From the NCBI RefSeq assembly GCF_006345805.1, contig NW_021832861.1, forward strand, positions 1 through 64,000: a stretch of 64,000 nt of DNA, read 5' to 3'. The position numbers and the translations under genes were made by a program. This document shows, piece after piece, positions 50,995 through 64,000 of this stretch (position 1 is the first letter of the stretch; each line of letters starts with the position of its first letter). This DNA comes from Octopus sinensis. Its lineage: Eukaryota. The notes beneath the pieces were generated by a model. That model was not told where the DNA came from. It did not search any database and saw nothing but the letters and a program-made list of their open reading frames with translations.

Positions 50995-53155
50995 CTGATT
51001 CGCATATATGATAAGGAAAGCGGGCACCTCCATTCTATGAGGTGTCACGCAGGTAAATGCGATGGCAGTGCATTTAGAGCACCTGCCCCTAGTCCGGCTC
51101 TAGTCTCCTTTGATTGTGACCACTGCAGCCGTTCTTTTTTGACGGCCGTAGGTCGATCGCAGCACATTCAACATAATCATCCTGTAGTGGCAAATGCCCG
51201 CAGGATTGCTGCTCGCTTAAAGCAAATTGCGAAAAAACGTGCCGATCGGGCAGCCGCTGCTGAGGCAATAGGCCAAAGACGCAGGGGCTGTTGGTCCGAC
51301 GAAGAAGTAGCGGTCCTCGTTGAAAAGGAGTCTGAGCTGAAGATGATAGGGGTAAAGCAGATCAATGCAGGCATTGCACGGTTCCTACCGGGAAAAACAG
51401 CCAAACAGGTAGGATCGAAAAGGGCTGACCTGGCCAAAAGGGTTCATAAGAGTCATCAAGGGTCAGAGCAGTCCGCGACCAATACCCAATCACAAATCGG
51501 GGGAGAACCCCAGTCTAGTTTTGACTGGAAGGATCGCTTCCTCAATGCTGCATGTCCCAGGCATACCCGCTGGTCTGCAGTCTTCTCCGAGGCCCTTTTG
51601 GAACTCGTGGAAGATGGGACAGCGATTGTTTGGGACTCATTTGAGAAAACTATAGAGGACTGGGTGGAGCACTATGAATCGCGTAGGGAAGTTACCAACA
51701 ACAGGAGAAATTTAGCTAGTGATAGAAACACACCGAATACGTGTAACTTTAGGCCTAGGCGTCGGGATAATCGTCAAGCTTATGCCCGACATCAAGATTT
51801 ATTCAGAAAGAATAGGAAGAAGCTCCTTGCAGTTGTTAGGTGAAAACAGGGAGCAGGAATGCCCTATTCCAATCTATTCAATAGAGGAATTCTATAAGAG
51901 CAGGCTTTCCGCTCCAGGCCCTGGGGTGGATCTGAAGAACTACCCTTCCTCCTCCCAGGTTGAGAACGACTCCATTTTGAGTCCGTTATCCGTGGAGGAG
52001 ATTAAGGTAAGTAGGAAGCAAATGAAGATCTCCTCAGCGGCGGGTCCAGATGGCATCACTATAGGTGAAATCAAAGCAATGGACCCAGCTGTTCTAACTA
52101 ATATATGCAACTGCATGTTGCTGGCGGGTAAAGTACCCGAGATCCTGAAGCGGGGGAAGTCGATTCTATTACCCAAGAAATCAGACGACTCATACGATCT
52201 TGCTAATTGTCGGCCAATCACGATATGTTCTGCGGTATATCGTTTATTTTCAAAGATGGTCGCCAAACGCATGCTTCAGGTAACTCCCCTAAATCAAAGT
52301 CAACGTGGCTTTATTCGCGCGGACGGCTGCAGTGAGAACTCTTTTCTCCTACGACAACTCGTCACTCGCGCGATGGGGAGGCCAGCACGACTGAGAATAC
52401 CGCGGCTGGAGGTTGCCTTCTTAGATCTCTCCAAGGCCTTCGACACAGTCTCGCACTCGTTGGTGTATGCGGGACTGCGGAGACTTGGGTTCCACGAACA
52501 CATAATAGCGCTCGTGGAGGGGATCTACGAAGGTAACACTACCAGATTCTCAGTCGATGGGCAACTGAGTTCACCTATTGAGATTCGTCGAGGTGTTAGG
52601 CAGGGGGACGCGCTCTCGCCGATCCTCTTTAACATTGCAACTGACCCACTGCTAGATGTGTTATCCGGCTGTGGGGATTTGCAGGTTGACGGGATCCGGA
52701 TGGATGGAATCGCGTACGCCGACGACATGGCCCTAGTTGCGAAATCGCGTGAGGGGCTCCAGGCTCTTATGGATAGATGCCTGGAGTTCTATAGCGCGGT
52801 TGGACTGGGGCTTAATGTCGTGGTGTGCGTGATTCTCCATTCGCGGCTCAGGCAAGTCCTACCTCGTCAATGATAGCACCCCGCCGATGATTAATGGGAT
52901 CACTATCAAAAAGGTAGAACCAGGGGATAAGGTATTATATCTTGGTGTTAGCATCCCTACGTGGACTTCAATCTCTAGTCGGGAGTTTGACTTAAATTCA
53001 GTGGAGCAGGTGTCACTGGACATTGATAAAATGTGCAGGGCTCCGCTGAAACCCCGACAAAAATTCCTCTTGCTTCAAAGTTATTACCTGCCTAGACTTT
53101 TTTACAGTCTGGTGCAGTCTTTGCCGTCAAGGGGGATATTAGAGAAGCTTGACAC
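50995..53155 (+). mobile_element. R2: R2 array unit 1 (5'-truncated within ZF2, 3'-truncated after RT)
   Basis: ORF pieces 50698-51843, 51719-52873, 52887-53155. Confidence 0.95.
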
Positions 53156-56100
53156 CGCTGGCCGTGCCTTAGTTTCCCTATTTGGTCTTTAATGACCCGG
53201 TTAGCTTGCTGTTATTTTTGATCAGTTGGTGGGCGGTTCTCCTCTCAAAGGGATGAAGGTCATGGCTCTATGGAGCCAATTAATAGTTGTCTGGTGCAGA
53301 TAGGGGCCGGGGGTTTTGTTGGTTATATGGATCGCCAGTTTTTCCCGTGCCGGTGTCGAGGGGCCTGTGAGTTAGGTACCCAGTTGCGGTGTTAGGGAAT
53401 AGAGCCCTTCACGGGCTGTAGATGGGGGACTGTCCGGCTCGTATAGTCGGGCTGTAGCCTCGTAGCAGTGTAGAGTGAAGGCCCTCTCGTTTGCTTCCAT
53501 TATGGGGGTGAATGCCATAGAGATGGGCGCCTTATTGGTGTTAATGTTCTAGCCGGTTGTTGTGACGGGTGGGATATAGCCGTATCTTCTATATTAGCCT
53601 AGAGCGTGTTTTATCGCCTCATTCGCCGGTTGAGGTTTCCGTAATTGGATATATCGTAGGACTTATCATAAGGTGGCTCTTTCTTGTTCACCGCTTTAGG
53701 TCTGGGGTAGATACACTCACGGGTCCCGTCTAGCCTAGACTGGTCCCCCGGATATCTTCTGGGGGAATTAGTTCTCGGAGGGGTGGCTACTTGCTTTCTG
53801 TCTCTTGATTCGGTTGGGCGGCCGTTAGGATTCTTTGGTTAGGTTAGTGGCGTAGCTTGCCGATCTTGGTGGGGTTGGCGTTGCACTTCCTTTAAGTTCA
53901 ACTTTATCGTTTCGCGGCTAGGTTCCCTAGTAAAATGCCGCCAAGAATAGTGATGTCTAACAATAATTTTAGAAACACACGGCAGCCAGGCGCCGCCAAA
54001 CTGGTGGCCTGTGAGTCCGGGATGGGGCCCCACGTCAGGCCGACCGCACAAACCAAATGCGGTTGGCCGAAAGACTACCCTCCCTTGCACGGGACAACGA
54101 GTCATCTCCGGTGCGAGTAAGTACAAGTGGCTCATTAGGCTTCAACATGACCAGTGTCGGGCGCTCTTTTTTGCGTCCGACACTGAAGTACTATAGAAAT
54201 AGGAAAGACATATTTAGTTTAAAATATAGAGAACATTCCCTGATAGTAAGAGGAGAACAACTCCCACTGGACCTAGCACATGACCCCATCGATGAAGTCC
54301 GGTTTTCGTTAGAGACGGACAGAGAGGGCGATGCTAGGGACCTCCCCAACCATTCTCTTTATTTAGAAATGGATCGAGAGGAGGAAGTGGGGGTATCAAG
54401 CCCCACTCCAGGTGGTAGAGAATTCCCTGCGCGTCTTGCTCCATAGCCTGTCCGCTATGTCCTCTTCGCTTCTCCTCCCACCATGAATGGGGGGAGCATG
54501 TTATTTGTAGACATGGTATTAGGCCTGTCTACAGATGCATTAAGTGTGATAGGGAAAGCGGTCACCTCCATTCCATGAGGTGTCACGCAAGTAAATGCGA
54601 TGGCAGTGCATTTAGAGCACCTGCCCCCAGTCCGGCTCTAGCCTCCTTTGATTGTGACCACTGTAGCCGTTCTTTTTTGACGGCTATAGGTCGATCACAG
54701 CACGTTCGGCATAAGCATCCTGTTGTGGCGAATGCCCGCAGGATTGCTGCTCGCCTTGAAGAAATAGCAAAGAAACGTGCCGATCGGGCAGCCGCTGCTG
54801 AGGCAATAGGCCAAAGACGCAGGGGCTGTTGGTCCGACGAAGAAGTAGCGGTCCTCGTCGAAAAGGAGTTTGAACTGATGAAGACAGGGGTTAAGCAAAT
54901 CAATGCAGCCATTGCACGATTCCTACCTGGTAAAACAGCTAAACAGGTGGGGTCGAAAAGGGCGGTTCTGGCCAAAAGGGCTCACAAGAGTCATCAAGGG
55001 TCAGAACAGTCCACTACCACTACCAATTCCCAATCACAAATCGGGGGAGAACCCCAGTCTAGTTCTGACTGGAGGGATCTCTTCCCCGGTTCTGCATGCC
55101 CCGGGCACACCCGCTGGTCTGCAGTCTTCTCCGAGGCCCTGTTGGAACTCGTGGAAGACGGGACAGCGATTGCTTGGGCTCATTTGAGAATGCTATAGAG
55201 GACTGGGTGGAGCACTATAAATCGCGTAGGGAAGTTACCAACAACAGGAGAAATTTAGCTAGAGATAGAAATATACCAAACACGAGTAACTTTAGGCCTA
55301 GGCGTCGGGATAAGCGTCAAGCTTATGCCCGACATCAGGATTTATTTAGGAAAATAGGAAGAAGCTCCTTGCAGTTGTGTTAGGTGAAAACAGGGAGCGG
55401 GAATACCCTATTCCAATCTATGCTATAGAGGAATTTTACAAGGGCAGGCTTTCCGCTCCAGGACCTGAGGTAGATCTGAAGAACTACCCTTCCTCCTCCC
55501 AGGTTGAGAACGACTATCTTGAGTCCATTCTCCGTGGAGGAGATTAAGGTAAGTAGGAAGACAAATGAAGATCTCCTCAGTGGCAGGTCCAGATGGTATC
55601 ACAATAGGTGAAATCAAAGCAATGGACCCAGCTGTTTTAACCAATATATGCAACTGCATGTTGCTGGCGGGTAAAGTGCCCGAGATCCTGAAGCGAGGGA
55701 AGTCGATTTTGAGACCGAAGAAATCAGACGACCCATACGATCTTGCTAATTGTCGGCCAATCACGATATGTTCTGCGGTATATCGTTTATTTTCAAAGAT
55801 GGTCGCCAAACGCATGCTTCAGGTAACTCCCCTAAATCAAAGTCAACGTGGCTTTATTTGCGCGGACGGATGTAGTGTGAACTCTTTTCTCCTACGACAA
55901 CTCGTCACTCGCGCGATGGGGAGACCAGCACGACTGAGAATACCGCGGCTGGAGGTTGCCTTCTTAGATCTCTCCAAGGCTTTCGACAGTGTCTCGCACT
56001 CTCTTGTGTATGCGGGACTGCGGAGGCTTGGATTCCACGAACACGTTTTAGTGCTCGTGGAGGGGATTTACGAAGTTAGTACTACCAGATTCTCAGTCGA

Positions 56101-56700
56101 TGGGCAGTTAAGCGAACCTATTGAGATTCGTCAAGGTGTTAGACAGGGGGACGCGCTCTCGCCGATCCTCTTTAACATTGCAACGGACCCACTGCTAGAT
56201 GTGTTATCCTGCCGTGAGGACTTGCTTGTTGAGGGGATCCGGATGGATGGAATCGCGTACGCGGACGACATGGCCCTAGTTGCGAAATCGCGCGAGGTGC
56301 TCCAGGCTCTTATGGATAGATGCCAGGAGTTCTATTGTGCTGTTGGAATGGGGCTTAATGTCGGTAAGTGTGCGTGGTTCTCCATTCGCGGCTGGGGCAA
56401 GTCCTACCTCGTCAATGATGGCACCCCGCCGATGATTAATGGGATCGCTATCAAAAAGGTAGAGCCGGGAGATAAGGTATCATATCTTGGTGTTAGCATC
56501 CCTACGTGGACTTCAATCTCTAGTCGGGAGTTTGACTTAAATTCAGTGGAGCAGGTGTCACTGGACATTGATAAAATGTGCAGGGCTCCGCTGAAACCCC
56601 GACAAAAATTCCTCTTGCTTCAAAGTTATTACCTGCCTAGACTTTTTTACAGTCTGGTGCAGTCTTTGCCGTCAAGGGGGATATTAGAGAAGCTTGACAC
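53156..56700 (+). mobile_element. R2: R2 array unit 2 (partial 5' UTR to thumb, 3'-truncated at the same junction as unit 1)
   Basis: Junction GCTTGACAC|CGCTGGCCGTGCC identical at 53156 and 56701; period 3545 bp. Confidence 0.95.
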
Positions 56701-59700
56701 CGCTGGCCGTGCCTTAGTTTCCCTATTTGGTCTTTAATGACCCGGTTAGCTTGCTGTTATTTTTGATCAGTTGGTGGGCGGTTCTCCTCTCAAAGGGATG
56801 AAGGTCATGGCTCTATGGAGCCAATTAATAGTTGTCTGGTGCAGATAGGGGCCGGGGGTTTTGGTTGGTTCAGTTATATGGATCGCCAGTTTTTCCCGTG
56901 CCGGTGTCGAGGGGCCTGTGAGTTAGGTACCCAGTTGCGGTGTTAGGGAATAGAGCCCTTCACGGGCTGTAGATGGGGGACTGTCCGGCTCGTATAGTCG
57001 GGCTGTAGCCTCGTAGCAGTGTAGAGTGAAGGCCCTCTCGTTTGCTTCCATTATGGGGGTGAATGCCATAGAGATGGGCGCCTTATTGGTGTTAATGTTC
57101 TAGCCGGTTGTTGTGACGGGTGGGATATAGCCGTATCTTCTATATTAGCCTAGAGCGTGTTTTATCGCCTCATTCGCCGGTTGAGGTTTCCGTAATTGGA
57201 TATATCGTAGGACTTATCATAAGGTGGCTCTTTCTTGTTCACCGCTTTAGGTCTGGGGTAGATACACTCACGGGTCCCGTCTAGCCTAGACTGGTCCCCC
57301 GGATATCTTCTGGGGGAATTAGTTCTCGGAGGGGTGGCTACTTGCTTTCTGTCTCTTGATTCGGTTGGGCGGCCGTTAGGATTCTTTGGTTAGGTTAGTG
57401 GCGTAGCTTGCCGATCTTGGTGGGGTTGGCGTTGCACTTCCTTTAAGTTCAACTTTATCGTTTCGGCTAGGTTCCCTAGTAAAATGCCGCCAAGAATAGT
57501 GATGTCTAACAATAATTTTAGAAACACACGGCAGCCAGGCGCCGCCAAACTGGTGGCCTGTGAGTCCGGGATGGGGCCCACACGTCAGGCCGACCGCACA
57601 AACCAAATGCGGTTGGCCGAAAGACTACCCTCCCTTGCACGGGACAACGAGTCATCTCCGGTGCGAGTAAGTACAAGTGGCTCATTAGGCTTCAACATGA
57701 CCAGTGTCGGGCGCTCTTTTTTGCGTCCGACACTGAAGTACTATAGAAATAGGAAAGGTATATTTAGTTTAAAATATAGTGATCATTCCCTGATAGTGAG
57801 AGGAGACCAACTCCCTCAGGACCTGGCACATGACCCCATCGATGAAGTCCGGTTTTCATTAGAGACGGACAGAGAGGGCGATGGTAGGGACCTCCTCAAC
57901 CATTCTCTTTATTTAGAAATGGATCGAGAGGAGGAAGTGGGGGTATCAAACCCCACTCCTAGTGGTAGAGAATTCCCTGCGCGTCTTGCTCCATAGCCTG
58001 CCCGCTATGTCCTCTGCGCTTCTCCTCCCCCCAGGATTGGGGAGAACATGTTATCTGTGGACATGGTATTAGGCCTGTCTACAGATGCATTAAGTGTGAT
58101 AGGGAAAGCGGTCACCTCCATTCCATGAGGTGTCACGCAAGTAAATGCGATGGCAGTGCATTTAGAGCACCTGCCCCCAGTCCGGCTCTAGCCTCCTTTG
58201 ATTGTGACCACTGTAGCCGTTCTTTTTTGACGGCTATAGGTCGATCACAGCACGTTCGGCATAAGCATCCTGTTGTGGCGAATGCCCGCAGGATTGCTGC
58301 TCGCCTTGAAGAAATAGCAAAGAAACGTGCAGATCGGGCAGCCGCTGCTGAGGCAATTGGCCAAAGACGCAGGGGCTGTTGGTCCGACGAAGAAGTAGCG
58401 GTCCTCGTTGAAAAGGAGTCTGAGCTGAAGATGACAGGGGTAAAGCAGATCAATGCAGGCATTGCACGATTCCTACCTGGTAAAACAGCTAAACAGGTGG
58501 GGTCGAAAAGGGCGGTTCTGGCCAAAAGGGCTCACAAGAGTCATCAAGGGTCAGAACAGTCCACTACCACTACCAATTCCCAATCACAAATCGGGGGAGA
58601 ACCCCAGTCTAGTTCTGACTGGAGGGATCTCTTCCCCGTTCTGCATGCCCGCCCCGGGCACACCCGCTGGTCTGCAGTCTTCTCCGAGGCCCTGTTGGAA
58701 CTCGTGGAAGACGGGACAGCGATTGCTTGGGCTCATTTGAGAATGCTATAGAGGACTGGGTGGAGCACTATAAATCGCGTAGGGAAGTTACCAACAACAG
58801 GAGAAATTTAGCTAGAGATAGAAATATACCAAACACGAGTAACTTTAGGCCTAGGCGTCGGGATAAGCGTCAAGCTTATGCCCGACATCAGGATTTATTT
58901 AGGAAAAATAGGAAGAAGCTCCTTGCAGTTGTGTTAGGTGAAAACAGGGAGCGGGAATACCCTATTCCAATCTATGCTATAGAGGAATTTTACAAGGGCA
59001 GGCTTTCCGCTCCAGGACCTGAGGTAGATCTGAAGAACTACCCTTCCTCCTCCCAGGTTGAGAACGACTATCTTGAGTCCATTCTCCGTGGAGGAGATTA
59101 AGGTAAGTAGGAAGACAAATGAAGATCTCCTCAGTGGCGGGTCCAGATGGTATCACAATAGGTGAAATCAAAGCAATGGACCCAGCTGTTTTAACCAATA
59201 TATGCAACTGCATGTTGCTGGCGGGTAAAGTGCCCGAGATCCTGAAGCGAGGAAGTCGATTTTGAGACCGAAGAAATCAGACGACCCATACGATCTTGCT
59301 AATTGTCGGCCAATCACGATATGTTCTGCGGTATATCGTTTATTTTCAAAGATGGTCGCCAAACGCATGCTTCAGGTAACTCCCCTAAATCAAAGTCAAC
59401 GTGGCTTTATTTGCGCGGACGGATGTAGTGTGAACTCTTTTCTCCTACGACAACTCGTCACTCGCGCGATGGGGAGACCAGCACGACTGAGAATACCGCG
59501 GCTGGAGGTTGCCTTCTTAGATCTCTCCAAGGCTTTCGACAGTGTCTCGCACTCTCTTGTGTATGCGGGACTGCGGAGGCTTGGATTCCACGAACACGTT
59601 TTAGTGCTCGTGGAGGGGATTTACGAAGTTAGTACTACCAGATTCTCAGTCGATGGGCAGTTAAGCGAACCTATTGAGATTCGTCAAGGTGTTAGACAGG

Positions 59701-61348
59701 GGGACGCGCTCTCGCCGCCGATCCTCTTTAACATTGCAACGGACCCACTGCTAGATGTGTTATCCTGCCGTGAGGACTTGCTTGTTGAGGGGATCCGGAT
59801 GGATGGAATCGCGTACGCGGACGACATGGCCCTAGTTGCGAAATCGCGCGAGGTGCTCCAGGCTCTTATGGATAGATGCCAGGAGTTCTATTGTGCTGTT
59901 GGAATGGGGCTTAATGTCGGTAAGTGTGCGTGGTTCTCCATTCGCGGCTGGGGCAAGTCCTACCTCGTCAATGATGGCACCCCGCCGATGATTAATGGGA
60001 TCGCTATCAAAAAGGTAGAGCCGGGAGATAAGGTATCATATCTTGGTGTTAGCATCCCTACGTGGACTTCAATCTCTAGTCGGGAGTTTGACTTAAATTC
60101 AGTGGAGCAGGTGTCACTGGACATTGATAAAATGTGCAGGGCTCCGCTGAAACCCCGACAAAAGTTCCTCTTGCTGCAGAGCTATTACCTGCCCAGACTG
60201 TTCTATGGTCTGGTGCAGGCTTTGCCGGCGAGAGGGACGTTAGAGATGCTTGACACGGCCATCCGCGTGGGGGCCAAGAGGATGCTACATCTTCCCTACT
60301 CTACCTCTTCTTCCTTCCTATATAGCAGCCGGCGAGATGGAGGATTAAGTCTTCACCAATTCGTGAAGCTAATACCAAAATCAGTTATTTGCCGTAACCT
60401 TCGCCTATTAACGTCTGATTATGTCTGTTAGAAAGGTTGCGGATTCTGCAGGATTAGCCGAACAGAACCAACAACTGATAGTTTCCTTCGACTTGCCGTT
60501 ACTTCCTGCGGACGCGGCCAAATACGACCCTGACATCCGGCTGGCGCACTCCCATCGATGGGCGGCCCAGCCGGTGCAGGGAATGTGTGCGGCGGCCTAC
60601 CGTGGGGATGTGATTGGCAATATTTGGATAAGTAGGCCGGGTAGGATAACGGAGAGATGCTTCTTGAGTTTACCCAAGATGCGCTCTAACGTCTATCCTA
60701 CCCGTGAAACTCTGACACGTGGACTCCGTGGTGACTCAACGTGTCCGAGATGTAGATTAGGAGCAGAGACAATATCTCACGTCAGTGGAGTCTGCGGTGC
60801 TCTTAAAGGGCCACGACTTGCCAGGCATAACAAAATTTGTGACCTGGTGGCAAAGGAAGCTGTAGACCATGGTTGAAGTGTCAGTATAGAGCCGTCTTAT
60901 ATTATAAACGGCTCTAGGCTGATACCTGACCTGGTCTTTAGTCGTCCGGAAAAGGTGGTTGTCGTTGATGTGACTATCAGATTGGAGCAGGGGGACGCCT
61001 TGAAAGAGGTTGCCCTCGAGAAAATGCGCAAATACCGTCCACTTGAACAATTGCTGTTGCAGGAGTTTAACTGGCCGGTAGAGGTGCATGGACTCCCAAT
61101 CGGTGCGTGTGGTGCCTACCAGCGAGTCTTGCACTAGATGCCTTGGGCATAAAAGATGAGTCATTTCAACGACTTCTCAGCCGGACTTCTTTAATTTATA
61201 CCTATAATATGTTGAGGGATTAGCCCTCACATAATAAGCCTATTTCCTCACCGACCCCAGCATAACAACCCTTCAGTGAAGTCCAAAGTTTTTTTTTTTT
61301 TTTTTTGGGACTGAGAGGTGGGTTTGTTGGGGACCCTGCAGTGTGTTT

Positions 61349-61391
<43 letters not shown>

Positions 61392-61668
61392 ACTTTACTG
61401 CGAGGGGTAGCTGGGCGGGTAAAGCCTAGCTTCGGTGAGGTTGAGTCCTACCTTGAAAACACTTTCTTAAGTAAAGAAATAAAAATGACTCTAAGCCCGG
61501 CCTATTGAAGGGAGAATTTTGAACTTTAGTTTACATACTAACACTTTGTTATTTGTTTCTTTTTTCGTCACTATTCTCTTTTAAAAATGGGGGAAACGGG
61601 ATACTGGCTACCGAGACAGTGGGACCACCCACTATAATAATAGGGAAGCCTCCGAAGAGGAGATTAGA
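56701..61668 (+). mobile_element. R2: R2 array unit 3 (partial 5' UTR to complete 3' end, disrupted ORF)
   Basis: 3 ZF, Myb, RT, CCHC, RLE; 3' UTR collinear with 37540-37903 ending ..ATTAGA, not followed by 28S. Confidence 0.96.
57969..58751 (+). CDS. R2 N-terminal DNA-binding region: CCHH, CCHC, CCHH zinc fingers and Myb (frame open 156 nt upstream of the first ATG)
   Basis: Manual translation: RIPCASCSIACPLCPLRFSSPQDWGEHVICGHGIRPVYRCIKCDRESGHLHSMRCHASKC..FDCDHCSRSFLTAIGRSQHVRHKH..GCWSDEE; same at 54419 and, on minus, near 41095. Confidence 0.88.
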   Translation, partial: RIPCASCSIACPLCPLRFSSPQDWGEHVICGHGIRPVYRCIKCDRESGHLHSMRCHASKCDGSAFRAPAPSPALASFDCDHCSRSFLTAIGRSQHVRHKHPVVANARRIAARLEEIAKKRADRAAAAEAIGQRRRGCWSDEEVAVLVEKESELKMTGVKQINAGIARFLPGKTAKQVGSKRAVLAKRAHKSHQGSEQSTTTTNSQSQIGGEPQSSSDWRDLFPVLHARPGHTRWSAVFSEALLELVEDGTAIAWAHLRML

Positions 61669-63352
61669 AGAGAAGAGAAGAAGTGGGGGCTTGATGGTTA
61701 TGACTCACGAACCTTGCAATGGTGGGTGTTCTCACAGCTCTTCCGCTTGGGGTGAACCTGATAACACTCGATTGGGTTGATTTGTCCCTTCCCCGAGAAA
61801 CCCGAGTTTCGTTGGGGGCAGAAAGGCTTTAGTCGGAGGGGCACCTGCGGTGTCCTATAGGAACACCGGTGTGGATGGTGTACAGGGGGATACCCACCTG
61901 CAGTGTTGGCAGCGAGGCGAGAGGGTGGAGAGAGGGTGGATGCACCATCAAGTCTGTCTGGTATGTTATGATCTGCCGGGCTTCACCCGGCAGATGGATG
62001 CACTGCCAGGCTTCACCCACAGGGACACTACCTTGTCGTGGTTTAAGAGCTTACGTCTGTGGGTGGGACGCAAGCCGTTATTGGCCTTTGCGGGCACCAA
62101 CCCATCCGCGGACTAACTAAATGTGTCCTTTCCCCATAGCGGTTCCAATTAATTGGTGGGGACCAAGCAGTGTGGAGGATTATCGTGTGCAGAGTGGGAT
62201 GATACCCTGCTGGTTGGTCGTGGCTGCGCTTGTCGGCCTCCTGCTCATCCGGGTCGGCCACTACCTGGCTTCGGTGTGGTGTGAAGGTCCCCCATTTCTA
62301 TATAAAGAATTTCACGGGGCGGAGCCCATGGACGGCTAAGGTCAGAACGGCTGGGTTCGCTCTCCGGATTGGGCTGCTGACGGGGCGAGGTGGGGATGGG
62401 GTGCTTCCATCCTGCCTCTTATCTCGCCCAAAAGTTAGCGCCTCGTGAAGGTTGCTGTCCCTGCTGTCCCTGGGTGGCTCACGACATTGTCTCCTGACGC
62501 CAGATTGTTGTGGCTCACACATGTTATTGTGGGAGTGGACTCACTTTTGGCCTCATTACGGGAGCCAGTCAACTGACGGGTAAACCGTCAGTATTGAGCC
62601 CTTCGCGGACTGTTGCGGGGTATTTGGCTTGGTATGCGGATTTCGGTTGGCCAGGAAGGATGTTGGCTTACGGTCTGCAGGGTTTGACTCCATACTCTGG
62701 TACTCTTGATTTTCTTCCACGTACTCTTGGAAAATGCCGCGAAGTCCAATTCCTTAACGAAAAGTTATGAAACACACGGTTGCCAGGGGCCGTATAAGAT
62801 GGTGGCTTGTGGGCAAAAGAGCGGGGCTCCAAGCCAGGCCGAGCGTGTTGCCCAACCACGTTGGGTCGATATCAACGCTTCCTGCAGTTGTATAGAGCCA
62901 TTTACACTGCAGGTAATACCAATGGCTCACATACCTAACTTGACCCTGAGGGTTTCTATCGGATCCTGCACATAAAACCCCCTCGATGAAGTCTTCATAA
63001 TTTTTTTTTTTTTTTTTTTTTCGAGGACCGAGAGGCTGGTGTGTAGGATGCCCCTCAAGAAAATTTTTTTTTTTTTTGAGGAGGTGGCATGGTTTGGGGG
63101 CCGTGCCTCGATAGTTGCTTAAAATTAAAATATAAGGAAAATTAAAATAACTCGGATTGGACTTTCAGCTTCTTCTGCCTATCGAAGAAGCACCCGCTTC
63201 GCTGTTAGTTTTAGATCCCCACTACTTAGGTAGATTTTTTTTTTTTTTGTACTTTTATTTCTTTTAAGATTAACGCAAGCTGGGAATTGGCTGGATAGTG
63301 TGGGACCACCCACGTTAAATAAAGGGAAGGAGACTATTTAGTCTCATTTAGA
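61669..63352 (+). mobile_element. ORF-less R2 derivative (5' leader with ribozyme + 3' UTR), SIDE-like
   Basis: 61935-62180 matches the R2 leader at 63398-63690; 62970-63352 matches the R2 3' UTR (GTGAAGTC/T-tract, GTGGGACCACCCAC, ATTTAGA); no RT-like ORF between. Confidence 0.7.
62023..62128 (+). ncRNA. HDV-like self-cleaving ribozyme core (P2-P3-L3-P1'-P4-J4/2-P2')
   Basis: GGACAC / ACC-TTGTCGT-GGT / TTAAGAG / 13-bp P4 / CTAA / GTGTCC. Confidence 0.75.
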
Positions 63353-64000
63353 GGCCTGTTTCCTCTCTTGTGGGGTCTGTTTCTTATGACCTCTTTTGAG
63401 GTGGATGCATTAACAGGTAGGCCTGGTATGTTATGACCTGTCGGGATTCAGTGGGCTTTGCTCACTGTTTTTTACTCGGCAGGTGGATGCACTGCCAGGT
63501 GGATGCACTGCCAGGCTTCGCCCTTTTGGACACTACCTTGGCGTGGTAAGAGAGCTTACGTCCATGCGGGGTCGATGCCGGATATGCTTTACGCAATGCC
63601 GGATAAAAACCCCGTATTGGACAAACTAAACGTGTTCTTTCTCCAAAACGGTTCCAATTTAATTTGGTGGGGAGCTAGTGGATTTTGGGCGATTCTGATA
63701 GGGGGGTGCATGTCTCCCTACTAGTTAGGCTGAGCGGCCGCTGGCCGAACCCTTAGAGTCTTTTTGGTCTTTAGTGACCCGGTTAGCGCTACTGTTTGTG
63801 TGAGTCGGTTAGTGGGCGGTTCTCCCTTCGGGGACAAGAAAGTAAAGGTCGTGGCTTTATTTTAGAGCCAATGAATTGTAGACTTAGGCGTATAGAGGCC
63901 GGAGATTCTGGTTGGTTCATCGGTGTGGATCGCCTGTTTTTCCTGTGCTGGCGTGGAGGGGCCTGTGAGTTAGGTACCCAGCTGCGGTGTTAAGGAATAG
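63353..64000 (+). mobile_element. R2: 5' leader/UTR of a further R2 copy running off the window edge
   Basis: 63739-64000 is homologous to 53156-53410, the sequence preceding the R2 ORF in units 2 and 3. Confidence 0.85.
63528..63637 (+). ncRNA. HDV-like ribozyme core, second copy
   Basis: GGACAC / ACC-TTGGCGT-GGT / AAGAGAG / 12-bp P4 with compensatory changes / CTAA / GTGTTC. Confidence 0.75.

What the first reader, a model, noticed from the sequence alone, without database searches (positions are those of the whole stretch)
62023..63637. HDV-like self-cleaving ribozyme with covariation in the R2 leader, with atypical P1.1
Seen in two full copies (62023-62128, 63528-63637) and one truncated copy (30348-30391). 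P2 is GGACAC/GTGT(C/T)C; P3 is ACC/GGT around L3 TT(C/G)NCGT. A 7-nt purine-rich P1' is followed by P4 of 12-13 bp with compensatory changes (GTCTGTGGGTGGG/CCCATCCGCGGAC versus GTCCATGCGGGG/CCCCGTATTGGAC), and CTAA precedes P2'. Established: R2 RNAs are released by HDV-like ribozymes (antigenomic HDV core ACC-UCCUCGC-GGU, J4/2 CUAA), and some use upstream 28S as the P1 5' strand. P1' here (TTAAGAG, AAGAGAG) is complementary to 28S CTCTCTTAA just 5' of the target. Unusual: the J1/4 GG is replaced by CT while L3 position 3 is G in two copies, suggesting a swapped G-C P1.1. The P1 assignment is inference.
Basis: partly seen in the sequence, partly recalled or inferred. Interest (0 to 1): 0.85.

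Follow-up and report, generated by a model that had tools for sequence, protein, structure and literature searches.

The report
R2 retrotransposon's HDV-like self-cleaving ribozyme
The reported sequences are the 5' self-cleaving (HDV-type) ribozyme of R2 ribosomal-DNA retrotransposons in an unidentified 2.7-Gb animal genome, well supported by compensating base changes but belonging to an already described class.

Summary
Two complete cores (62023-62128, 63528-63637) and one truncated core (30348-~30407) have the HDV-like order P2-P3-L3-P3'-P1'-P4-J4/2-P2'.

About 35 copies in the genome fall into four lineages. P4 also covaries, at six positions. The CTAA cytosine is invariant in all 34 aligned copies.

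Four independent non-rDNA copies begin exactly at the predicted cut. That cut is 28S position -9, or -11 in the window's second copy.

J1/2 is a large folded insertion that a conserved 10-bp helix can close.

P1.1 is one inverted G-C pair next to a U-U. It never varies here, but canonical relatives carry CC/GG at exactly those positions.

All of this fits R2 ribozyme biology as described by Eickbush et al. 2013, and weak P1.1 helices are known in active HDV-family ribozymes. This is a new member of a known kind.

Copy 1 lacks its P1 5' strand and belongs to an ORF-less, SIDE-like element. Copy 2 looks structurally complete. Catalysis was not tested.

The parts
63363..63369 (+). Copy 2 (lineage B): P1 5' strand CTCTCTT. 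This is the element's 5'-terminal heptamer, identical to 28S -11..-5. The predicted cut is immediately 5' of 63363.
   Evidence: 7/7 Watson-Crick with AAGAGAG at 63548-54; P1 covariation.
63370..63527 (+). Copy 2: J1/2 insertion of 158 nt made of hairpin modules (GTTATGACC...GGTGGATGCAC). Its ends can pair as GUGGGGUCUG/CAGGCUUCGC.
   Evidence: MFE -65.5 kcal/mol, z = -4.0, ends closed in both MFE and centroid structures; the closing complementarity is conserved in 27 copies.
63528..63637 (+). Copy 2: ribozyme core. P2 63528-33/63632-37; P3 63535-37/63545-47; L3 63538-44; P1' 63548-54; P1.1/J1/4 CTTAC 63555-59; P4 63560-63622; J4/2 63623-31 with the putative catalytic C at 63626.
   Evidence: (CM 112 bits).
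61683..62022 (+). Copy 1 (lineage A): 340-nt J1/2 leader starting GTGGGGGCTTGATGG. The heptamer before it (61676-82, AGAAGAA) is filler, not a P1 5' strand.
   Evidence: 2/7 pairs with TTAAGAG.
62023..62128 (+). Copy 1: complete ribozyme core. P2 62023-28/62123-28; P3 62030-32/62040-42; L3 62033-39; P1' 62043-49; CTTAC 62050-54; P4 62055-62113; J4/2 62114-22 with C at 62117. It lacks a substrate strand, so it is predicted inactive in place.
   Evidence: (119 bits).
61683..63352 (+). The whole ORF-less (~1.67 kb) R2-derived element that carries copy 1. It ends with the R2 3'-UTR motif GGGACCACCCAC (63302-13) ...CATTTAGA.
   Evidence: two further tandem copies at contig 68610-70231 and 70237-71842; in L055 the same family is flanked by 28S on both sides at the R2 site and has no ORF.
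30153..30407 (+). Copy 3 (lineage C): degenerate P1 5' strand TTATTTC (30153-59), 188-nt J1/2 (30160-30347), and the core 5' half from 30348. It is truncated within P4 and has no J4/2 or P2'.
   Evidence: no 3' half found; 49.8 bits.
37520..37586 (-). Context: an R2 3' end (GGGACCACCCAC...GAATTTAGA) joined to 28S TAGCCAAATGCCTCGTCATC at the canonical R2 site. The R2 ORF (RT, CCHC, endonuclease region) lies at 39802..37904.

Best explanation
These sequences are the 5' processing ribozyme of R2 elements, an HDV-like nested double pseudoknot. R2 elements are site-specific non-LTR retrotransposons of the 28S rRNA gene.

Inferred mechanism: R2 is transcribed as part of the 28S precursor. The heptamer at the 28S/R2 junction is CUCUUAA at 28S -9..-3 in lineage A, with lineage-specific variants elsewhere. 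It pairs with P1', which lies immediately 3' of the P3 hairpin and 128-352 nt downstream. A folded J1/2 domain whose two ends pair brings P1 and P2 together. The cytosine of J4/2 CUAA then catalyses cleavage immediately 5' of P1. This releases an R2 RNA that carries 7-9 nt of 28S-like sequence at its 5' end, and reverse transcription copies that sequence into new insertions.

Shown here: the fold topology, covariation in P1 and P4, invariance of the core nucleotides, and 5' ends of dispersed copies at the predicted cut.

Inferred: catalysis itself, the one-pair inverted P1.1 (L3 G with J1/4 C, next to U-U), and a role for the J1/2 closing helix.

In the window, copy 2 is structurally complete. 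Copy 1 has lost its substrate strand. Copy 3 is truncated.
For: (1) P1. Four lineages have perfectly matched pairs: CTCTTAA/TTAAGAG, CTCTTAC/GTAAGAG, CTCTTTC/GAAAGAG, CTCTCTT/AAGAGAG. Fifteen copies are paired 7/7. In the formal count, three P1 pairs change on both sides, 88.3% of cells are paired against 82.8% in shuffles (0/500 reach the observed value), and slid registers give 23-49%.

(2) P4. A 12-bp closing helix is 91% paired, six positions show alternative Watson-Crick pairs, and 0/1000 permutations reach the observed value. Stable hairpins form in nearly all copies despite different sequences and lengths of 42-120 nt.

(3) P2. It is 98.7% paired, with one G-C to A-U double change.

(4) Core nucleotides. 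The C, T and first A of J4/2 CTAA, the CTTAC, and L3 positions 2-3 are invariant in 34 copies. L3 U1 and G6 are at least 90% conserved.

(5) 5' ends. Four lineage-C copies at unrelated loci start exactly at the C of CTCTTTC, after unrelated flanks (TTATAG, TGTAAA, GATGCA, CAGGAA). Two lineage-A copies start at CTCTTA(A/C) after a partial leader.

(6) R2 identity. Junctions with 28S occur on both sides at the R2 site. The ORF downstream of copy 2 has three C2H2 fingers, a Myb-like region and RT. A second copy shows RT, CCHC and endonuclease motifs.

(7) Relatives. R2 relatives with 39% protein identity carry a canonical compact version with the same segment order: P3, L3 UCCACGC, P1' GAGAGUC pairing 28S GACUCUC, GG, UAA, P4, GCUAAAA. 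One of them sits in 28S context.

(8) Literature. R2 ribozymes use 28S as the P1 5' strand and cut 9-36 nt upstream. P1 and P1' are separated by 23 to over 700 nt (PMC3774820).
Against: - No Rfam HDV-family model matches, even at E <= 10. The same scan also misses the canonical relatives, so this carries little weight.
- P1.1 has only one standard pair, in inverted orientation. The second position is U-U in 26/26 copies.
- The first P1 pair is C-G rather than the G-U of HDV.
- J1/4 after P1.1 is 3 nt, whereas 0-2 nt is reported for R2 ribozymes.
- P3, L3 and P1.1 never vary informatively, so covariation neither supports nor tests them.
- Most copies examined are decayed copies outside intact rDNA.
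- The copies are related by descent, so cell counts overstate the number of independent events. P1 rests on about three lineage-level changes.
- No cleavage assay was done.
Confidence: 0.85

Rival explanations
1. A decayed or non-catalytic derivative. The RNA keeps the HDV-like secondary structure, for example as a folded 5' UTR used for protein binding or translation, but the altered P1.1 (U-U plus an inverted G-C) and the C-G first pair of P1 have abolished self-cleavage. The 5' ends would then be made in some other way.
For: P1.1 has one standard pair only. Some R2 ribozymes with good predicted folds, such as sow bug and wild-type horseshoe crab, showed no cleavage in vitro. All copies seen are outside intact rDNA, and many are mutated.
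Against: Keeping P1 complementary through three lineage-specific changes, and keeping the CTAA cytosine and L3 U/G invariant, is what selection for cleavage predicts. Dispersed copies begin at the predicted cut. Fast-cleaving HDV-family ribozymes with one Watson-Crick pair plus U:U or C:U in P1.1 have been crystallised, and CPEB3 has G-C plus U-U.
Confidence: 0.1
2. The same ribozyme with a different tertiary register. P1.1 would form between L3 G3-U4 and the AC of CUUAC, or P1 would be 6 bp and P1.1 would use the following GC. The reader's swapped pair would then be wrong.
For: In lineage A, GU (L3 positions 3-4) could pair with AC (CUUAC positions 4-5). This is read directly from the sequence.
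Against: L3 position 4 is G in lineages B and C while CUUAC is unchanged, which breaks that pairing. In the canonical relatives, the two nucleotides directly after P1' are the P1.1 GG, followed by a 3-nt UAA, in the same register as CU + UAC here.
Confidence: 0.04
3. Chance resemblance within a repeated 5' UTR, with no HDV-like fold at all.
For: There is no Rfam hit. RNAalifold on the core alone recovers P2 but not P3 or P4.
Against: There is long-range P1 covariation and P4 covariation. The descriptor finds 0 hits in 40 shuffles. The architecture matches that of relatives in 28S context.
Confidence: 0.01

Closest known systems
R2 HDV-like ribozymes that use 28S rRNA sequence as the P1 5' strand (Eickbush, Burke & Eickbush 2013, PMC3774820)
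   Same: The element type, its position at the 5' end of R2, the double-pseudoknot order, P1 formed with the 28S sequence just upstream of the insertion site, cleavage inside 28S (reported range -9 to -36), a large J1/2 (23 to over 700 nt reported; 216-498 nt in silkmoths), a variable P4, and a CUAA-type J4/2. New copies carry 28S-like sequence at their 5' ends, and P1' drift shifts the cut site.
   Different: L3 is UUG(U/G)CGU instead of the UC(C/U)NCG(U/C) type. P1.1 is an inverted single G-C next to U-U instead of CC/GG. There are 3 nt (UAC) between P1.1 and P4. Four co-resident lineages show P1 variants, two of which (CTCTTAC, CTCTTTC) no longer match 28S itself, so the junction sequence is inherited with the element. 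The host species is unidentified.
Canonical compact R2 ribozymes in relatives found here (L091 in 28S context, L089; ENA metagenome contigs; R2 protein 39% identical)
   Same: Identical segment order and spacing logic: P2 (G)UACAC, P3 of 3 bp, L3 of 7 nt with U1 and G6, a 7-nt P1' pairing 28S, a 2-nt P1.1 strand, a 3-nt UA(A/C), the P4 hairpin, then (G/A)CUAAA(A/N) and P2'.
   Different: The relatives pair GACUCUC (cut at -13). Their J1/2 is only 4 nt (L091). They have L3 UCCACGC and P1.1 GG, and a short P4 of 6 bp in L089.
HDV-family ribozymes with a weakened P1.1: mammalian CPEB3 (G-C + U-U), C. briggsae (U:A + C:U), Ackermannviridae (U:A + U:U)
   Same: P1.1 is reduced to one Watson-Crick pair plus a pyrimidine-pyrimidine pair. 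Activity is retained in those cases (PMC4836649, PMC13635239).
   Different: In those ribozymes the pyrimidine is in L3 and the purine follows P1. Here the purine (G) is in L3 and the C follows P1. They are also not retrotransposon 5' ends that use rRNA as substrate.
Large HDV-like ribozymes with a structured J1/2 peripheral domain (Webb et al. 2016, PMC4908430)
   Same: A folded domain inserted in J1/2 has ends that come together, which could hold P1 and P2 side by side (the 'pinch').
   Different: Here the closing helix is only predicted. It rests on MFE folds and conserved complementarity, with no covariation and no kinetics.
SIDEs: non-autonomous R2 derivatives that keep the ribozyme and the 3' UTR (Eickbush & Eickbush 2012, PMC3414825)
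   Same: Lineage A elements are 1.65-1.8 kb and have no ORF. They have the ribozyme leader at the 5' end and an R2-type 3' end, and they occur at the exact R2 site in 28S (L055).
   Different: No nucleotide similarity of the internal part to the co-resident coding R2 was detected beyond the ribozyme. Origin by internal deletion is therefore not shown.

Membership tests
HDV-like self-cleaving ribozymes | Nested double-pseudoknot order: P1-(J1/2)-P2-P3-L3-P3'-P1'-P1.1-P4-J4/2-P2' | tested here: met
   All segments occur in this order in about 34 copies. Overall pairing is 88% against 23-49% for slid registers. The descriptor scan finds the two window copies only.
HDV-like self-cleaving ribozymes | A P1 of about 7 bp whose 3' strand directly follows P3'; the cleavage site is at its 5' base | tested here: met
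   Four lineage-specific complementary heptamer pairs; three pairs change on both sides.
HDV-like self-cleaving ribozymes | A 3-bp P3 closing a 7-nt L3 with U at position 1 and G at position 6 (the reverse wobble of HDV U20-G25) | tested here: met
   ACC/GGT is 96% paired. L3 U1 and G6 are at least 90% conserved. There is no covariation because the positions are invariant.
HDV-like self-cleaving ribozymes | A two-pair P1.1 between L3 positions 2-3 and the two nucleotides after P1' | tested here: inconclusive
   G(L3-3) with C is present in 26/26 copies, and U(L3-2)-U never forms a standard pair. Both are invariant in about 35 genome copies. Relatives have CC/GG at these positions. Weak P1.1 helices are known in active members.
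HDV-like self-cleaving ribozymes | A catalytic cytosine in J4/2 followed by adenosines | tested here: met
   The C, T and first A of CTAA are invariant in 34/34 copies, and the following positions are A in at least 90%. This is sequence-level evidence only.
HDV-like self-cleaving ribozymes | A P4 hairpin (dispensable and variable) between J1/4 and J4/2 | tested here: met
   The 12-bp helix is 91% paired with six covarying positions; z-scores are -3.7 and -5.5.
HDV-like self-cleaving ribozymes | Site-specific, divalent-ion-dependent self-cleavage | not testable with these tools
   There is indirect support only: dispersed copies begin at the predicted cut.
HDV-like self-cleaving ribozymes | A match to a curated Rfam HDV-family model | tested here: not met
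   No hit at E <= 10. The test is uninformative, because the canonical R2 ribozymes of L089 and L091-type relatives are also missed.
R2 non-LTR retrotransposons | Insertion at the specific 28S site ...CTCTTAAGG|TAGCCAAATGCC... | tested here: met
   The 3' junction is in the window at 37540/37541. 5' junctions with 28S occur in L009-L011, L017, L019, L027, L029, L030, L036 and L037. Both junctions are present in L055.
R2 non-LTR retrotransposons | A single ORF with N-terminal zinc fingers/Myb, RT, and a C-terminal CCHC plus restriction-like endonuclease, with no APE domain | tested here: met
   Three C2H2 fingers, a Myb-like region and RT lie downstream of copy 2. RT, CPRC...H...C and PD...K-type motifs are in the 632-aa ORF at 39802..37904. 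These were seen on two decayed copies, not on one intact ORF.
SIDE-like non-autonomous R2 derivatives | ORF-less, with the R2 ribozyme at the 5' end and the R2 3' UTR, mobilised to the R2 site | tested here: met
   In L055, 28S flanks an element of about 1.8 kb with no ORF of 120 aa or more on its strand. The window element 61683-63352 has two tandem relatives.
SIDE-like non-autonomous R2 derivatives | Derived from a full-length R2 by internal deletion | tested here: not met
   blastn finds only the 67-nt ribozyme half shared with the neighbouring coding R2. The parent lineage may be absent or diverged.

The most novel reading that the evidence does not exclude
All R2 lineages of this genome use a naturally inverted, single-pair P1.1: purine in L3, pyrimidine after P1, next to a U-U. 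They remain active because a conserved 10-bp helix closing the 128-352-nt J1/2 domain (GUGGGGCYUG/CAGGCUUCAC, abutting P1 and 6 nt from P2) compensates for the weak inner pseudoknot. This would be a natural example of a peripheral-domain 'pinch' substituting for core stability. It would come with a set of co-resident lineages that record stepwise drift of the cut site (-9 to -11) and junction sequences that have diverged from 28S.
Probability: 0.35. Interest if true: 0.45.

Novelty: new member of a known kind. Interest (0 to 1): 0.3.

Why it matters
The locus adds a well-documented natural example to the R2 ribozyme family, in four co-resident lineages whose P1 strands have co-evolved. Two of the 5' heptamers no longer match 28S. 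This illustrates the published model in which the junction sequence is copied with the element and the cut site drifts.

It also offers a natural P1.1 variant (inverted G-C plus U-U) and a large closed J1/2 domain. Both could be used to test how much inner-pseudoknot stability an HDV-type ribozyme needs.

For annotation, it shows that Rfam's HDV models miss R2 ribozymes. The ends of R2 and SIDE-like elements in this genome can instead be placed from the heptamer/P1' pair.

It does not open a new class of RNA or mechanism.

Tried and rejected
- Rfam at gathering and at E <= 10 found no ribozyme family at any of the three sites. I judged this uninformative after the same scan missed the canonical R2 ribozymes in L089 and L090.
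- A P1 made from the sequence immediately upstream of P2: CCCACAG 5' of copy 1 is complementary to CTGTGGG in P4, but other copies read CCCTTAG, CCCATAG and so on without compensation. Rejected as chance.
- RNAalifold on the core alignment recovers P2 only and mispairs L3. It cannot model the pseudoknot, and the P4 columns are out of register between lineages because lineages B and C have a bulged U. I replaced it with explicit pair counts.
I used a pattern scan instead. It found no lineage with a canonical CC/GG P1.1. Three extra zero-mismatch hits (L059, L063, L085) were chance matches.
- A metagenome scan for the conserved core 28-mer found nothing.
- The homology search with the R2 protein gave only 24-39% identical relatives from diverse animals, so the host was not identified.
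- An alternative P1.1 using AC of CUUAC is rejected: L3 position 4 changes U to G without compensation.
- The idea that the sequence following the truncated 28S at 36690 is a tRNA-derived element got no support: ARAGORN found nothing.
Full report
**Observation**

The window is part of a 124-kb contig of a 2.7-Gb eukaryotic assembly.

- Copy 1: P2 GGACAC 62023-28 / GTGTCC 62123-28; P3 ACC/GGT around L3 TTGTCGT; P1' TTAAGAG 62043-49; CTTAC; a 13-bp P4; CTAA with C at 62117.
- Copy 2: the same plan at 63528-63637, with L3 TTGGCGT, P1' AAGAGAG and C at 63626.
- Copy 3: begins at 30348 and breaks off inside P4.

A generic descriptor returns exactly the two full copies, with their exact end coordinates, and nothing in 40 dinucleotide shuffles of the window. 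It required P2 6 bp, P3 3 bp, L3 U1/G6, a P4 closing helix, CTAA and P2'. Its spacings were fitted after the fact, so it is a sanity check only.

A covariance model built later from genomic copies finds only these three places in the 64 kb. Rfam finds no ribozyme family there, even at E <= 10. It equally misses clear-cut canonical R2 ribozymes in related contigs, so that negative result carries little weight.

**Context**

- On the minus strand, an R2 3' end abuts 28S TAGCCAAATGCCTCGTCATC at the canonical R2 site (37540/37541). Upstream of it is an ORF with RT, CCHC and endonuclease-type motifs.
- On the plus strand, R2 3'-UTR motifs lie at 61621 and 63302. R2-type elements therefore sit head to tail here, without 28S between them.
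- Copy 2 heads a roughly 5.3-kb element. Its ORF, which has one in-frame stop, encodes three C2H2 fingers, a Myb-like region and RT.
- Copy 1 belongs to a 1.67-kb element without an ORF (61683-63352). It recurs twice more in tandem further along the contig.
- On another chromosome, the same family sits between both 28S flanks at the exact R2 site (L055). It behaves like the non-autonomous SIDE derivatives of R2 (PMC3414825). Derivation by internal deletion could not be shown.

**Genomic copies and the missing P1 strand**

DNA and pattern searches of the genome gave about 35 distinct copies. Reading their upstream flanks located the true 5' end of the elements 128-352 nt upstream of P2. It has the form heptamer, then G/A, then TGGGGC(C/T)TG.

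In copies that still lie in 28S, the flank reads ...GGGAGTAACTATGACT|CTCTTAAG|TGGGG... The heptamer is therefore 28S -9..-3.

Four lineages are present.

| Lineage | 5' heptamer | P1' |
|---|---|---|
| A1 | CTCTTAA | TTAAGAG |
| A2 | CTCTTAC | GTAAGAG |
| C | CTCTTTC | GAAAGAG |
| B (includes window copy 2, heptamer at 63363-69) | CTCTCTT | AAGAGAG |

Fifteen copies are paired 7/7. The exceptions are visibly decayed or 5'-truncated.

On a 26-row alignment, three of the seven P1 pairs change on both sides (UA/CG; UA/AU; CG/AU/UA). The whole structure is 88.3% paired, against 82.8% for shuffled partners (0 of 500 shuffles reach it) and 23-49% for slid registers.

Two of the heptamers (CTCTTAC, CTCTTTC) no longer equal the 28S sequence. 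The junction sequence is therefore inherited with the element, as the published model proposes.

**Other helices and core nucleotides**

- P4 differs in sequence and length among lineages (42-120 nt) but always closes with a 12-13-bp helix. Lineages B and C have one bulged U. The helix is 91% paired, six positions show alternative Watson-Crick pairs, and 0 of 1000 permutations reach the observed pairing. The two window hairpins have z = -5.5 and -3.7.
- P2 is 98.7% paired, with one G-C to A-U double change.
- P3 is essentially invariant.
- The C, T and first A of CTAA, the CTTAC after P1', and L3 positions 2-3 are invariant in 34 copies. L3 U1 and G6, the counterparts of HDV U20 and G25, are at least 90% conserved.

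**Cleavage site**

The fold predicts cleavage immediately 5' of the heptamer. That is 28S -9 for lineages A and C and -11 for lineage B.

Four lineage-C copies at unrelated chromosomal sites begin exactly there, after unrelated flanks. Two lineage-A copies begin at CTCTTA(A/C) after a partial leader. This is what full-length reverse transcripts of a cleaved RNA would give. The evidence is indirect.

**J1/2**

The 128-352 nt between P1 and P2 consist of hairpin modules. In MFE folds of nine representatives, the two ends of the insertion pair with each other. For copy 2, z = -4.0.

A 10-bp complementarity, GUGGGGCYUG with CAGGCUUCAC, starts right after P1 and ends 6 nt before P2. It is kept in 27 copies, but without double-sided changes.

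I take this as a likely closing helix of a peripheral domain, in the sense of Webb et al. 2016. It is inference.

**P1.1**

The two nucleotides after P1' are C and U. L3 positions 3 and 2 are G and U. This gives one G-C pair in the orientation opposite to HDV, plus a U-U. It holds in every copy except the truncated window copy, whose L3 position 3 is C. Within this genome it cannot be tested by covariation.

Two contigs encoding R2 proteins 39% identical to the window's carry a compact canonical ribozyme with the same segment order:

- L089 (1312-1378): P3 AGG/CCU, L3 UCCACGC, P1' GAGAGUC, then GG, UAA, P4, GCUAAAA, P2'.
- L091: the same, with P3 AGC/GCU. It lies directly behind 28S ...GACTCTCTTAAG, so its P1 is 28S -13..-7.

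The register CU + UAC in the window elements matches GG + UAA there.

An alternative pairing with the AC of CUUAC is contradicted by the uncompensated U-to-G change at L3 position 4.

**Comparison with what is known**

Eickbush et al. 2013 (PMC3774820) showed the following:

- Most R2 ribozymes take their P1 5' strand from 28S.
- They cut 9 to 36 nt upstream of the insertion site.
- P1 and P1' are separated by 23 to more than 700 nt.
- P4 is variable.
- P1' drift moves the cut site.

The present case fits on every count.

A P1.1 made of one Watson-Crick pair plus U-U or C:U is documented in CPEB3 (PMC4836649). It is also documented in two fast-cleaving, crystallised ribozymes (PMC13635239).

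What remains particular here:

- the inverted polarity of the single P1.1 pair;
- the 3-nt J1/4;
- the C-G first pair of P1;
- four co-resident lineages with co-evolved P1 strands;
- the ORF-less lineage that keeps the ribozyme.

**Verdict**

This is a new member of a known kind.

In the window, copy 2 is structurally complete. Copy 1 has a complete core but no substrate strand (61676-82 is AG-rich filler). Copy 3 is a fragment.

Catalysis is untested, so confidence in the ribozyme assignment is 0.85 and not higher. Interest is modest (0.3).

Noticed in passing
window 61621-64000, continuing on the contig to about 71842 (L058): R2-type elements lie head to tail with no 28S between them: an R2 3' end at 61668, 14 nt of AG-rich filler, the ORF-less element 61683-63352, the coding R2 from 63353, then two more ORF-less copies at contig 68610-70231 and 70237-71842. 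This may reflect end-to-end template jumping or local amplification.
   Followed up: partly
L057 (G000:C27:14086500-14092300, minus strand), also L026/L028: The 5'-terminal 22-23-nt unit CTCTCTTGTGGGGCCTGTTT(CT), which is the P1 strand plus the first element bases, is repeated 9-10 times in tandem between 28S and the lineage-B ribozyme. This gives many alternative P1 5' strands. Window copy 2 has a partial extra unit (GGCCTGTTTC, 63353-62).
   Followed up: partly
window 36690-37540 (-): The 28S fragment downstream of the R2 insertion has large insertions relative to the Rfam model. It stops at model position 2821 (...CGTTAGCAC), after which unrelated sequence follows. No tRNA-like gene was found there, and the cause of the break was not determined.
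   Followed up: partly
L090:3982-4065 (JGI metagenome contig): A second HDV-like candidate (GCUGAAC ACC UCCGCGU GGU GAGAG...UUCAGC) lies a few hundred nt downstream of an R2 ORF. It gave weak hits to Rfam drz-agam-1 (E 3.6) and to my model (E 1.9). The same contig starts with a canonical -28-type R2 ribozyme (ACC UCUUCGU GGU CCCGCC A GG).
   Followed up: no
L007, L011, L013, L017 (P4 5' strand): The G-run in the 5' strand of P4 is expanded to 10-13 G in several lineage-A copies (homopolymer expansion), while the base of the helix stays in register.
   Followed up: no
window 45233-60876 (+): There are several further decayed retroelement ORFs: one with an APE-type endonuclease plus RT (46378-47973), and R2-like zinc-finger/RT pieces (50632-52873, 55553-56737, 59229-60431). 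None has a ribozyme core nearby, so they are presumably 5'-truncated. The region is a retroelement graveyard derived from rDNA.
   Followed up: partly
L012-L015 (G000:C18 3.79-4.19 Mb and C11612): Four near-identical copies share a 5'-truncated junction, 28S ...GACTCTCTT|GACCCACGAACC. This indicates segmental duplication of an R2-bearing 28S fragment. Their remaining heptamer CTCTTGA could still form 6 of 7 P1 pairs with GTAAGAG.
   Followed up: no
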